A stretch of 64,000 nucleotides of DNA, from the sequence record NC_031107.2; one strand, given 5' to 3'. The notes under the pieces are model-generated. The model was not told the origin of the DNA. It saw only the letters and a list, made by a program, of their open reading frames with translations, and ran no database searches. Shown piece by piece: positions 18,173 through 24,777 of this stretch; within the stretch, counting starts at the first letter, position 1, and each line of letters opens with the position of its first letter. A program made the position numbers and the translations under genes.

Positions 18173-18631
18173 ATGTATGTAAACACCCGCAAGGATACCC
18201 GAATGATGAATAAGATTGCTTTTGAGAAAGGCACCGGTCTGATTGTTAACGAAGTTATTATCCCGAACACGGACAATGCGTCCTGGGAACATCTGGCCCT
18301 GCGTTTGAACGGTAAGAAGGTTTCCGTTACGCTCACTAACGAACTCGCACTCAACGGCAACCTGGCTAAAGCCGGGCCGGAGTTTGCGGCGTTCAACGTT
18401 CCCCAGAGCGTCGCCGTTTGTTTTTTGAAGAACGCGTACTTCACTAGCCGCGTCTACAGCTGGAAGCTACTGGCTTCCCTGAATAAGTCGGTGGGCCTCA
18501 ATGCCAAACAGGGCATACCGAACGACCACATTGCTAATCACGGTATCGCTATCGTGGTATCGCGTGCCGCAGGCGATGATCTGGCCTTCTCTTTCTGTTA
18601 CGCCTACGGAGCACAGGATGCAGCTGCCTAA
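18173..18631 (+). CDS. Hypothetical protein
   Basis: 152-aa ORF in a co-directional cluster. Confidence 0.65.
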   Translation: MYVNTRKDTRMMNKIAFEKGTGLIVNEVIIPNTDNASWEHLALRLNGKKVSVTLTNELALNGNLAKAGPEFAAFNVPQSVAVCFLKNAYFTSRVYSWKLLASLNKSVGLNAKQGIPNDHIANHGIAIVVSRAAGDDLAFSFCYAYGAQDAAA

Positions 18632-19529
18632 TGCCGAGATTCAAATTCATGCCGTAAACAGTTGGTACACCGATTCGCTGGTGTACCAGTTCGGTAGCTA
18701 CGAACAACAGCGTAGCAAACTTTACCGCTGCCTCGGCGAAGTCGCTGAGGGTGTGCAAAAACACGATAACCTGAAAGTGGCCGCGGGAGCAGGTCGACTA
18801 CTGTGGACGTTTATCGGGCTCATGCACTTCTCGAAGCCCGCCAACGACGTTCCTCTGCACGACCAGCTTGACCATTACATCCAGTTAAAGGTGAAAGCTA
18901 CCAACAAACATGCACAACTGCACGCACTGATGCACAACGCATTGGATCTTGTCTGGCAGACACCTGAGGATGGTGAGTTCTGCCTGCACAGTTTCCTGAA
19001 AGCCTTCGGTGATTTCATGATGTCGTTAGGCTCACTGTGTCGGGTGTGTGGGTTGGAGTTTGACCGGGTCGTCTACAACGGTCATTATGCGCTGATTCGG
19101 ACTCGGGGCGTAATGAATGAACTGGGTATGTTCGTACTCAGTCCCGACGACTTTGATGGCGACTCGATAACACATCCCCTGGTTAACGAGAAGCTCCCGT
19201 CGGGTCAGTTGACGCACTTCTATATCGAAAGTGGTTTGAATGCCGCCGCGGCTAAAGCCTTTGTGCCTTACGTTCACACACCGTTTGCGTCTCACAAGGT
19301 TGATGAGGTCAGTGATAAGTTGGCAGAGGCGTTGGAAGAACTGCTGGAGCGCCACATCTACGCCGATGATAAATGGCGGCATCTTACGTTCGAGCGGACG
19401 CCAAAGATTCTTATCACGTACGAAAACGGCACCGTGACGGCGACGTACAACGACGACCTCAAGTTTATCATGAACGCCCTAAAACAGGATAATGCACACC
19501 ATGAAACAATATCTGGACTTACTGCGTGA
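18618..19529 (+). CDS. Degenerate MazG-like (NTP pyrophosphohydrolase fold) paralog with C-terminal extension
   Basis: [18 protein letters not shown]...GAGR aligns with QGTKLYEEDGEAATGVGK...GLGD of 22593-23444; start at ATG 18618 with GGAG RBS. Confidence 0.6.
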
Positions 19530-20520
19530 TGTTCGCGAAAACGGGGATGTAAAAGCCGACCGTACCGGTACGGGCACCCTCTCTGTTTTCGGACGCCAGA
19601 TGCGCTTTAACTTACAAGAAGGTTTTCCGCTGGTCACCACCAAAAAGGTTCACCTTCGTTCAATCATCCATGAGCTGCTGTGGTTCCTCATGGGTGACAC
19701 CAACATCCAGTATTTGAAAGACAACAACGTCACCATCTGGGACGAATGGGCGGATAAAAACGGTGACTTAGGCCCGGTGTACGGTAAGCAATGGCGTAGC
19801 TGGATTGCACACACGGAAATGTCGGCGTTTCATAGTGCTGGGTGTGCAGAGCTCGAATCCGAGGGATGGGAACAATCAGGGACGTGGGAATCTGACATCC
19901 TGTACAGGAAAAGCATTGACCAAATCGCCAAAGTGGTTGACCAGCTGCGTAATGACCCCGACAACCGTCGTATTATTGTCAGCGCCTGGAACGTGGCAGA
20001 GCTAGACGAGATGGCCTTGGCCCCGTGTCATGCGTTCTTCCAGTTCTACACGCGCGAGTTGTCAGTCGCTGAAAGATTAGACTGGATGGAAAATAACCTT
20101 CCTGATAAGTTTGAAGCGATCCGCTTTAGTAATGATATCATTAACAACGACACACTAATGCACGCGGTGATTGACAACGAAGGTGTCCCAGCTCGCGTTC
20201 TTTCTTGTCAGCTCTATCAGCGTAGTGCGGACATGTTCCTTGGCGTACCGTTTAACATCGCGTCTTACGCCTTGCTGGTACACATGTTTGCACAACAGGC
20301 GAACATGGCGGTAGGCGACTTCGTCTGGACAGGTGGTGATACGCATCTGTACTCCAACCATCTGGAACAAGCTGACCTCCAACTTACCCGTGACCCTAAA
20401 CCGTTACCGAAGTTGGTTATCAAACGTAAGCCCGATTCCATCTTCGACTACAAATTCGAAGACTTCGAGGTTGTCGATTACATTTCGCATCCGGCGATTA
20501 AAGCGCCCGTCGCGATCTAA
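19501..20520 (+). CDS. thyA: Thymidylate synthase with two insertions
   Basis: [31 protein letters not shown], catalytic [23 protein letters not shown] and GDTHLY motifs. Confidence 0.97.
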
Positions 20521-21886: not shown

Positions 21887-22366
21887 GTGTCTATGACTCC
21901 AATTAACTATAATCTGGTAGTGAAAGAACTTTCGAATGGTCTGGTAGCATTAGACAGTGACGAAGCAAAACGACTCAACTTCCGGCCGGGGTTGGATCTG
22001 AGTGAATTCCGTACCATCCGTTACGGTGCAGGTCGCCAGAGAGGGGTGACTGCGCACGCAGTCGATATGGCGGCAAAGCACCGCGGTAGCGTACTGTACT
22101 TGGTTCATGCCGTGGCGTTGCGTGACGAGGTCGTGGAAAAATTCCATGCGAAAGCTTCTGGTGACGGATGGCTCACAGTACATTCTGGCTATCTGCCAGA
22201 AAACTGGCAGAACGCAACAGGATCTGGACTCTCTGGTTATGAGAAGTTCAGTTTGGTCATTGTCGATGAAGCTGGCTTCTTCTTCAACAAGTTTAGCTTT
22301 GACAAAATTTACCGTAGTCTGGCTGACGTCGTCACGCCGGATGTGGTTATTCATCTAATCAATTAA
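21887..22366 (+). CDS. Small P-loop-like protein with degenerate Walker A
   Basis: GAGRQRGVT (Lys absent) and Walker B LVIVDEAG; GAGG RBS. Confidence 0.6.
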   Translation: MSMTPINYNLVVKELSNGLVALDSDEAKRLNFRPGLDLSEFRTIRYGAGRQRGVTAHAVDMAAKHRGSVLYLVHAVALRDEVVEKFHAKASGDGWLTVHSGYLPENWQNATGSGLSGYEKFSLVIVDEAGFFFNKFSFDKIYRSLADVVTPDVVIHLIN

Positions 22367-22377
22367 GAGAGTAAGCA

Positions 22378-22533
22378 ATGAGCAAGAGCGAGCAGGTTCA
22401 GGATACACAACTGGCAACTGACCCGATGGACTTCGGTGATATCCCAGGGCTTGACCCGGACATCACTGTTGAGGGCGGTGTGGACGCAGCGACCGAAGAC
22501 GACGGTTGCGCTGGCGGTGCCTGCAAAATTTAA
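22378..22533 (+). CDS. 51-aa acidic peptide ending in an NrdA-type redox tail (DDGCAGGACKI)
   Basis: Translated by hand: MSKSEQVQDTQLATDPMDFGDIPGLDPDITVEGGVDAATEDDGCAGGACKI; ATG 22378, TAA 22531-22533; fills the gap between two co-directional genes; GAGAG upstream. Confidence 0.8.
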   Translation: MSKSEQVQDTQLATDPMDFGDIPGLDPDITVEGGVDAATEDDGCAGGACKI

Positions 22534-22592
22534 CAAATTGGTGTGTCCATATGGACACACCACTTATTTTTTTACCCAAAAGGAAAATTATC

Positions 22593-23444
22593 ATGGGCGA
22601 CCAATTCGTCATTCAGGTACCGCACGCTGTCATCTTCGAACCTAACAAACACCTTGCGGATATCAATGCGCAGATGGCAAGCTACATTCATCATGCGGGC
22701 AGTGCGCCGTGGGAATTTGAAACAATCTATGCTGCGGCAGTGAGCAAAGAAACCGGTTTAACCCGCGTTGAAGGTAAAGTGCGTACCGAAGACGGTAAAC
22801 TGGAAATCAACGACATCGTGTTCCCTCTGCGTTTAGCAACCGCGGTGTACAAAGGCGAAGTTACCCATCCTCGCTACGTCCGTCTGTACAGCATCGCCGA
22901 TTGCGTGAATCACGTTATTGGCTGGTCGAAAGCACGCGGCATCCTCGACAACGGTGTCTGGTTCACCCAGGGCACTAAGCTGTATGAAGAAGATGGTGAA
23001 GCAGCAACTGGTGTGGGTAAGAACAAACATCCGCTCATCATGGACGGCCTGGGTGATGCACTGGTGGTTCTGGTAAACCTGATGGAACTGACCGGTCACG
23101 AGTCGCTGGAAATTGCCTGCTGGGCTGCCGGTGACGAATTCAGAATGGGTAACACCCATTACCTGTTCCACAAAATGCGCTACCACATCACCTGTGCCAT
23201 CGATGAGCTGTGGGGTGTTGCCGGTTTGGATTCGCCGAAGAAGCTGGATTTCAAATCGTTCGATAACGCGGTGTGCATTAACATCGAATACCACTACAGT
23301 GAAATGATCGCGTACGCTAATACACTGGCGAAAGCGTACGACATGAATCTGGAACAATGCTTCTCCCTGGCGTGGGATGAAATCAAAGACCGTAAAGGTT
23401 TCTTGAATGCCGACGGCATCTTCATTAAAGAAGCTGACGCCTAA
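22593..23444 (+). CDS. MazG-like dNTP/NTP pyrophosphohydrolase with N-terminal extra domain
   Basis: WSKARGI...QGTKLYEEDGE...DGLGDALVVL and AWDEIKDRKG..NADGIFIKE motifs; AGGA RBS before ATG 22593. Confidence 0.8.
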   Translation: MGDQFVIQVPHAVIFEPNKHLADINAQMASYIHHAGSAPWEFETIYAAAVSKETGLTRVEGKVRTEDGKLEINDIVFPLRLATAVYKGEVTHPRYVRLYSIADCVNHVIGWSKARGILDNGVWFTQGTKLYEEDGEAATGVGKNKHPLIMDGLGDALVVLVNLMELTGHESLEIACWAAGDEFRMGNTHYLFHKMRYHITCAIDELWGVAGLDSPKKLDFKSFDNAVCINIEYHYSEMIAYANTLAKAYDMNLEQCFSLAWDEIKDRKGFLNADGIFIKEADA

Positions 23445-24741: not shown

Positions 24742-24777
24742 CGAGTAGCCCAATGGGCTACTCGCTTTCTTTTTTTT
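24742..24777 (+). terminator. Intrinsic terminator between convergent genes
   Basis: cgagtagccc-aat-gggctactcg with a T tract on + and an A tract upstream. Confidence 0.8.

What the first reader, a model, noticed from the sequence alone, without database searches (positions are those of the whole stretch)
22378..22533. Free-standing ribonucleotide-reductase redox tail encoded as a 51-aa gene
Seen: a short ORF below the track cut-off, 12 Asp/Glu against 2 Lys, ending TEDDGCAGGACKI-stop, between the P-loop and MazG genes and about 2 kb from thyA. No nrdA body is upstream or anywhere in the window. Known: E. coli class Ia RNR alpha (NrdA) ends ...IQDDGCESGACKI. Its Cys754/Cys759 pair sits on a flexible acidic tail that carries electrons from thioredoxin/glutaredoxin to the active site, and re-reduction can limit turnover. 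The match is 9 of the last 11 residues, with the same CxxxxC spacing and the same terminal position. Inference: either (a) a trans-acting redox shuttle that accelerates host or phage RNR, (b) the detached tail of a split phage NrdA encoded elsewhere, or (c) a decoy that captures Trx/Grx. Any of these would be an unusual phage strategy for controlling dNTP supply.
Basis: partly seen in the sequence, partly recalled or inferred. Interest (0 to 1): 0.88.

Follow-up and report, generated by a model that had tools for sequence, protein, structure and literature searches.

The report
Free-standing RNR redox tail peptide
A 51-residue phage gene encodes, on its own, the flexible two-cysteine tail that normally ends the large subunit of ribonucleotide reductase; it belongs to an undescribed family of detached tails in phages and bacteria that probably passes electrons to the enzyme that makes DNA building blocks.

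Summary
Window 22378-22533 (+) is gp255 of Erwinia jumbo phage Asesino. It is a 51-aa acidic ORF whose last 11 residues equal the C-terminus of a solved class Ia RNR alpha chain (7mdi_A) and match E. coli NrdA at 9 of 11.

- **No RNR in the phage.** Neither Asesino nor SPN3US encodes NrdA or NrdB anywhere in the genome.
- **Conserved gene.** It occurs in five jumbo-phage genera, always beside thyA and MazG. Both Cys, G, A and K are invariant despite synonymous codon changes.
- **Wider family.** An exhaustive profile search finds 76 clusters, almost all 39-120 aa with the module at the C-terminus. Members occur in at least three other phage lineages and in Neisseriaceae and Moraxella chromosomes.
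- **Fusions.** Two members are fused to a deoxyribonucleotidase and to an NTP pyrophosphohydrolase.
- **Key case.** The deoxyribonucleotidase fusion lies directly upstream of a class Ia nrdA that stops just before its own Cys tail.

Best reading: a trans-acting RNR tail that relays reducing equivalents from Trx/Grx to NrdA, here the host's. Whether it stimulates or inhibits is inferred, not shown. No paper describing it was found. Interest is high.

The parts
22378..22533 (+). gp255: 51-aa free-standing RNR-alpha tail protein (stop included)
   Evidence: phrog_14561 at E 6e-31; homologs in 72 phage records
22365..22371 (+). Shine-Dalgarno-like AAGAGAG, 6 nt before the ATG; overlaps the stop of gp254
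   Evidence: read directly
22420..22458 (+). Acidic-hydrophobic motif (residues 15-27, D-x-x-D-F-G-D-I-P-G-L-D-P). It is conserved in jumbo-phage members and replaced by D-x-D-N-L-D-type motifs in the other lineages. Its partner is unknown.
   Evidence: alignments A1, A4
22465..22530 (+). NrdA-tail-like module (residues 30-51): T-V-E-G-G-V-D, a short acidic linker, then C-x-G-G-A-C-K-I. Cys44 is at 22507-22509 and Cys49 at 22522-22524.
   Evidence: tblastn of viral NrdA hits only this stretch; HMM and alignment to NrdA ends; codon-level conservation
22539..22572 (+). Terminator-like hairpin (10 pairs, 6 GC) followed by a T-run, closing the thyA-to-gp255 gene row
21887..22366 (+). gp254, the conserved upstream neighbour (phrog_2586). 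It has a weak RecA/P-loop-like fold with Val in the usual Lys position of Walker A. It is context, not shown to be a partner.
22593..23444 (+). gp256, MazG-type nucleotide pyrophosphohydrolase; downstream neighbour
   Evidence: phrog_7855 at E 1e-132; annotation
19492..20520 (+). Thymidylate synthase (RefSeq start at 19501)
   Evidence: PF00303 at E 2e-117
18618..19529 (+). gp250, a second MazG-like protein upstream of thyA
   Evidence: phrog_10269, with weaker hits to MazG phrogs

Best explanation
gp255 is a disordered, acidic carrier of the class Ia RNR alpha C-terminal redox tail, made as a separate polypeptide. Like the tethered tail, its Cys44/Cys49 pair is expected to be reduced by host thioredoxin or glutaredoxin. 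It would then enter the NrdA active site and re-reduce the catalytic disulfide after each turnover. Asesino has no RNR of its own, so the target would be the host's NrdAB. Extra pre-reduced tails supplied in trans would raise or sustain dNTP output for replicating a 246-kb genome. What is shown: the gene, its conservation, its identity to NrdA tails, the absence of a phage RNR, the link to dNTP-metabolism genes, and a natural tail-less NrdA next to a tail-bearing neighbour. What is inferred: binding to Trx/Grx and NrdA, electron transfer, and the stimulatory direction.
For: - **Tail identity.** It is identical to 7mdi_A and 9 of 11 to E. coli NrdA. The family profile matches NrdA only end to end at the C-terminus.
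- **Known tail function.** Class I tails are disordered Cys-pair elements that re-reduce the active site and are in turn reduced by Trx/Grx (PMC9669993, PMC4078304). About 24 residues are disordered in E. coli alpha (bioRxiv 10.1101/2021.07.31.454598).
- **Selection on the protein.** In 22 homologs both Cys, G-5, A-4 and K-2 are invariant, each with 2-4 synonymous codons, and the stop always follows directly.
- **Disorder.** AF2 gives pLDDT 56 and no secondary structure.
- **No phage RNR.** Asesino and SPN3US have no NrdA or NrdB. Pfam scans of 20 large hypothetical Asesino proteins found no RNR domain.
- **Gene context.** Five jumbo genera place it in the thyA...MazG row. An unrelated 60-kb phage lineage places it among dCMP-deaminase-like, dNMP kinase, ThyX and dUTPase genes.
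- **Fusions.** The module is fused to a deoxyribonucleotidase and to an NTP pyrophosphohydrolase.
- **Tail in trans.** In L139 and L140 the fusion sits directly upstream of nrdA-nrdB. That NrdA is 68-71% identical to an enterobacterial-type NrdA yet stops before the Cys pair.
Against: - There is no expression or interaction evidence for any member.
- The host NrdA presumably keeps its own tethered tail, and a free peptide could compete with it rather than help.
- Two phage lineages carry the gene next to terminase and portal genes, not nucleotide genes.
- In Neisseriaceae it sits between iscS and iscU, and elsewhere in bacteria its neighbours vary.
- The conserved N-terminal motifs are unexplained by a pure shuttle role.
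- The tail-less NrdA case rests on two Logan contigs from related samples.
- The Erwinia amylovora NrdA tail was not retrieved.
Confidence: 0.5

Rival explanations
1. Competitive mimic or decoy. The free tail occupies the NrdA active-site channel, or soaks up reduced Trx/Grx. This would lower host RNR activity or disturb host thiol redox, in the way Sml1 competes with the R1 tail in yeast.
For: It has the same tail identity as the shuttle model. It is small, acidic and disordered. The host enzyme is expected to have its own tail already.
Against: Asesino and SPN3US have no RNR and depend on host dNTP synthesis. Its neighbours are dNTP-building enzymes. A tail-less NrdA with the module next door argues that the module serves the enzyme.
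Confidence: 0.15
2. Docking tag or adaptor. The tail is an address that brings other proteins to NrdA or to Trx/Grx, and the N-terminal motif holds a second partner, assembling a dNTP-synthesis complex.
For: The module is fused to two enzymes that need no reductant. Acidic-hydrophobic motifs upstream of the tail are conserved. gp254 is always the upstream neighbour in jumbo phages.
Against: The Cys pair is invariant, which a pure docking role does not require. No partner for the N-terminal motif was identified. The test for likeness to the NrdB tail was negative.
Confidence: 0.15
3. A dithiol or metal-binding peptide working outside RNR, for example in Fe-S cluster assembly or general disulfide relay. 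On this view the likeness to the NrdA tail reflects only shared recognition by Trx/Grx.
For: In Neisseria, Eikenella and Kingella the gene lies just upstream of iscU, after iscS. Other bacterial contexts are unrelated to nucleotides.
Against: Phage contexts, the two fusions and the tail-less NrdA all point to deoxynucleotide metabolism. In Kingella the gene also follows class III nrdD.
Confidence: 0.08
4. A decaying remnant of a lost phage nrdA, or a RiPP precursor for the radical SAM enzymes gp180 and gp181.
For: The tail must once have come from an nrdA 3' end. Asesino and SPN3US carry two radical SAM genes.
Against: There is purifying selection across five genera and in bacteria. No nrdA remnants flank the gene. 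The radical SAM genes are about 60 kb away, and the other lineages have no maturase beside the gene.
Confidence: 0.03

Closest known systems
C-terminal redox tail of class Ia RNR alpha (NrdA; Cys754/Cys759 in E. coli)
   Same: Same terminal motif C-x-[GS]-G-A-C-K-[IL] followed directly by the stop. Same preceding acidic stretch, same disorder, and about the same length as the 24 disordered residues of E. coli alpha.
   Different: It is not attached to any catalytic body. It carries its own start codon and extra N-terminal acidic motifs, and it is encoded by genomes that have no RNR.
Dedicated RNR reductants: thioredoxin, glutaredoxin, NrdH, and the Grx domain fused to NrdB in Facklamia ignava (PMC6187632)
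   Same: They are accessory redox elements of the RNR cycle that can be encoded separately or fused in unusual places.
   Different: Those are folded thioredoxin-fold proteins with a CxxC site that reduce the tail. gp255 is the tail itself: unfolded, with a CxxxxC spacing.
Sml1, Spd1, Hug1 and Dif1: small disordered RNR regulators of yeasts (from my own knowledge)
   Same: They are small, intrinsically disordered proteins that act on the large subunit, and Sml1 competes with the R1 C-terminal tail.
   Different: No sequence relation was found. Those are inhibitors without the redox Cys pair. No bacterial or phage counterpart is known to me.
Genes-in-pieces nrdA of Aeromonas phage Aeh1 (from my own knowledge)
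   Same: A phage class Ia alpha subunit made from separate polypeptides.
   Different: That split lies inside the catalytic body and was caused by a homing endonuclease gene. Here only the tail is detached, and in Asesino there is no body at all.
PHROG families 14561, 24014, 38753 and 20277
   Same: gp255 is a member.
   Different: These families carry no function or description. The link to NrdA is not recorded there.

Membership tests
Class Ia RNR alpha subunit (NrdA) | Ten-stranded alpha/beta barrel catalytic body (Ribonuc_red_lgN / lgC) | tested here: not met
   Pfam finds nothing in the 51-aa protein. tblastn of five NrdA sequences against the whole genome hits only the tail.
Class Ia RNR alpha subunit (NrdA) | Disordered C-terminal tail ending in the double-Cys motif | tested here: met
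Detached RNR-tail family (phrog_14561 and relatives; bacterial 'hypothetical proteins' such as NMBH4476_0838) | Small ORF or C-terminal module with [TV]-V-E-G-G-[VF]-D, an acidic linker, then C-x-[GS]-G-A-C-K-[IL] and the stop | tested here: met
Thioredoxin-fold RNR reductants (Trx, Grx, NrdH) | Thioredoxin fold with a CxxC active site | tested here: not met
   No Pfam hit. The AF2 model has no secondary structure. The Cys spacing is CxxxxC.
Sml1-type disordered RNR inhibitors | Binding to the large subunit with inhibition of activity | not testable with these tools
   Only smallness and disorder are shared. No homolog appeared in any search.
NrdB C-terminal tail mimic | Match to the NrdB C-terminal alpha-binding motif beyond what composition gives | tested here: not met
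   A PSSM built from 22 non-redundant NrdB ends was compared with 2000 shuffles per peptide. The p-values were mostly 0.03-0.9 and the best positions were inconsistent. The HMM scored 1 bit or less.
RiPP precursor | Adjacent maturase or transporter genes | tested here: not met
   The neighbours are gp254, MazG and thyA. The radical SAM genes are about 60 kb away.

The most novel reading that the evidence does not exclude
Detached RNR tails are a so far undescribed class of trans-acting small proteins that tune class Ia ribonucleotide reductase. RNR-less jumbo phages would use them as an auxiliary factor to drive the host enzyme. Some phages run a two-piece NrdA whose redox tail sits on a neighbouring enzyme. 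Neisseriaceae would co-express one with their Fe-S assembly genes.
Probability: 0.45. Interest if true: 0.85.

Novelty: new variant of a known kind. Interest (0 to 1): 0.8.

Why it matters
Re-reduction of the active site by the flexible tail is the least visible step of the class Ia RNR cycle, because the tail is disordered in structures. A natural family in which the tail is a separate polypeptide shows that the step can work between molecules. The family includes a case where NrdA has none of its own. It also offers defined, small objects for structural description of tail-Trx/Grx and tail-active-site contacts. For phage biology, it suggests how large phages without RNR could still influence host dNTP supply, using a 51-residue gene that annotation pipelines label hypothetical. 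For bacteria, it flags an unannotated or 'hypothetical' small gene inside the isc operon of Neisseria species.

Tried and rejected
- **Split phage NrdA.** No NrdA or NrdB was found in the Asesino or SPN3US genomes. Twenty large hypothetical proteins showed no RNR domain.
- **Decayed nrdA in the flanks.** None was found.
- **N-terminal motif as an NrdB-tail mimic.** It looked suggestive by eye, but it is not better than composition-matched shuffles.
- **gp254 as a redox partner.** It has only a weak RecA/P-loop-like fold (pLDDT 64, Foldseek E about 3e-3) and no thioredoxin fold.
- **Literature.** Ten searches and reads found no description of the peptide, of SPN3US gp234, or of the Neisseria locus tags.
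- **Relatives of the deoxyribonucleotidase fusion in IMG/VR.** None was found.
- **Pfam on the two fusions.** Negative; PHROGs identified them.

Full report
**Source and observation.** The window is the last 64 kb of Erwinia phage vB_EamM_Asesino (NC_031107.2, 246,290 bp, genus Erskinevirus). Window position equals record position minus 182,290. The ORF at 22378-22533 (+) exists as described. It has 51 codons and an ATG start, with 12 acidic against 2 basic residues. A Shine-Dalgarno-like AAGAGAG lies 6 nt upstream, and a 10-bp GC-rich hairpin with a T-run starts 5 nt after the stop. RefSeq annotates it as gp255, hypothetical protein.

**Is the tail likeness real?** A sequence search of the PDB returns one hit, 7mdi_A, a 773-aa RNR alpha chain. 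Its last 11 residues are identical to those of gp255. In IMG/VR the same ending closes full-length NrdA genes of other phages. A profile of the gp255 family matches 11 of 11 such NrdA sequences only at the extreme C-terminus, end to end. In a scan of one genome per bacterial species, the 80 best loci with the tail pattern were all either ends of NrdA (60) or small ORFs (20).

**No RNR in the phage.** tblastn of five NrdA and four NrdB sequences against the complete Asesino genome finds only the 11-22 residue tail at 22465-22530. The 289 annotated features include no RNR, thioredoxin or glutaredoxin. Pfam finds no RNR domain in the 20 largest hypothetical proteins. SPN3US, from another genus, is likewise empty. 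So the gene is neither a piece of a split phage nrdA nor flanked by nrdA debris.

**Conservation.**
- tblastn finds the gene in 72 phage records.
- The 17 related records whose annotation I inspected, together with Asesino, span Erskinevirus, Machinavirus, Seoulvirus (SPN3US_0234), Derbicusvirus and Alexandravirus.
- In four of the five genera the gene sits in the row thyA, two or three ORFs, a gp254-like gene, the peptide, then MazG. Derbicusvirus has one extra ORF before MazG. In the two Alexandravirus records neither thyA nor MazG is annotated in the stretch fetched.
- The N-terminus varies in length (47-97 aa), but the last 35 residues are conserved.
- Over 22 sequences both Cys, G-5, A-4 and K-2 never change, although each uses 2-4 synonymous codons. 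The stop always follows directly.
- AlphaFold2 with a family alignment gives pLDDT 56, pTM 0.14 and no secondary structure, as expected for a disordered tail.

**The family is wider than jumbo phages.**
- Roughly 60-kb IMG/VR contigs carry a 47-49 aa homolog but share no other detectable protein with Asesino. There it sits among dCMP-deaminase-like, RdgC-like, dNMP kinase, ThyX and dUTPase genes, with no NrdA or NrdB within 10 kb.
- Two further phage lineages carry it near terminase and portal genes.
- Twenty bacterial loci encode free-standing versions, in Neisseria (including a 42-aa ORF in N. meningitidis), Kingella, Eikenella, Simonsiella and Moraxella.
- In Neisseria, Eikenella and Kingella the gene lies just upstream of iscU and after iscS. 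In Kingella it also follows class III nrdD. In Moraxella it lies between aroE and an acyl-CoA dehydrogenase gene. Other contexts vary.
- Source names are all 'hypothetical protein', and none has a Pfam domain.
- An exhaustive profile search of 1.84 billion representatives gives 76 clusters at E <= 0.001. Nearly all are 39-120 aa with the match ending at the C-terminus.

**Fusions and a tail-less NrdA.** Two members are longer. P0120 is a 5'-3' deoxyribonucleotidase with the module at its end. P0140 is a nucleotide pyrophosphohydrolase with the module at its end. P0120 lies on 13-kb contigs from two samples, in the order DHFR, P0120, nrdA, nrdB. That NrdA has an ATP-cone and an intein and is 68-71% identical to an enterobacterial-type NrdA. 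It stops right after the N-T-R-D-G stretch, where canonical NrdA continues into the Cys tail. No tail is hidden in any frame, and nrdB begins 46 nt later. In alignment A6 the detached modules overlay the missing part. Their T-V-E-G-G stretch falls on the N-T-R-D-G of NrdA.

**Mechanism.** Class I tails are disordered double-Cys elements that re-reduce the active site and are themselves reduced by Trx or Grx (PMC9669993, PMC4078304). A class Ia NrdA without a tail, next to a protein that carries one, is best explained if the tail works between polypeptides. By extension, gp255 would be reduced by host Trx/Grx and deliver electrons to host NrdA, supporting dNTP supply for a phage that lacks RNR. 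That matches its neighbours thyA and two MazG-like genes, and DHFR and dTMP kinase elsewhere in the genome. Binding, electron transfer and the sign of the effect are inferred. The rival readings are competition or decoy, an adaptor role suggested by the fusions and the unexplained N-terminal motifs, and a non-RNR thiol or metal role suggested by the isc context.

A likeness of the N-terminal motif to the NrdB C-terminal tail did not beat shuffled controls. gp254 is only weakly RecA/P-loop-like. No paper on the family was found. In my reasoning I twice recalled short fragments of E. coli protein ends (NrdB and SSB) from memory.

**Verdict.** This is a new variant of a known element, the RNR redox tail, existing as an independent and widely distributed small gene.

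Noticed in passing
window 18618-19529: gp250 is a second MazG-like protein (phrog_10269, weaker hits to MazG phrogs), so thyA is bracketed by two pyrophosphohydrolase-type genes.
   Followed up: partly
window 19492-20520: The thymidylate synthase is 342 aa against a 266-position Pfam model matched end to end, so it carries about 75 extra residues as insertions.
   Followed up: no
window 21887-22366: gp254 has a Walker-B-like hhhhDE and a Walker-A-like G-x-G-x-x-x-G-V-T with Val where Lys is usual. This is invariant in 15 homologs, so it may be a non-catalytic P-loop protein.
   Followed up: partly
window 24742-24764: A perfect 10-bp hairpin with T-runs on both strands lies between the convergent genes gp258 and gp259. 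It looks like a bidirectional terminator.
   Followed up: no
NC_031107.2 140957-143195 (outside the window); SPN3US 140024-142139: Two adjacent radical SAM genes, next to several small ORFs, are conserved in Asesino and SPN3US. Their function is unknown.
   Followed up: no
L091 2869-2900 and 3077-3090: The N. meningitidis 42-aa gene between iscS and iscU is flanked by sequences that look like Neisseria DNA uptake sequence repeats. The iscS-to-peptide spacer varies between species and holds an unidentified 231-aa ORF in some.
   Followed up: partly
L066 144-3069: In Kingella denitrificans the peptide gene follows a class III (anaerobic) nrdD and two small ORFs, and precedes iscU.
   Followed up: no
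P0085, P0087, P0088, P0094 (bacterial clusters): Four clusters keep the N-terminal part but end in unrelated residues instead of the Cys tail. They are probably frameshifted alleles or sequencing errors.
   Followed up: no
L139 1944-4970: The tail-less NrdA is 1008 aa because of an intein (weak Pfam Intein_splicing hit; gap in the tblastn alignment).
   Followed up: partly
unlisted rows: Two Vibrio and two Pseudomonas phage records also matched the peptide. They were not inspected and may be NrdA ends or further free-standing members.
   Followed up: no
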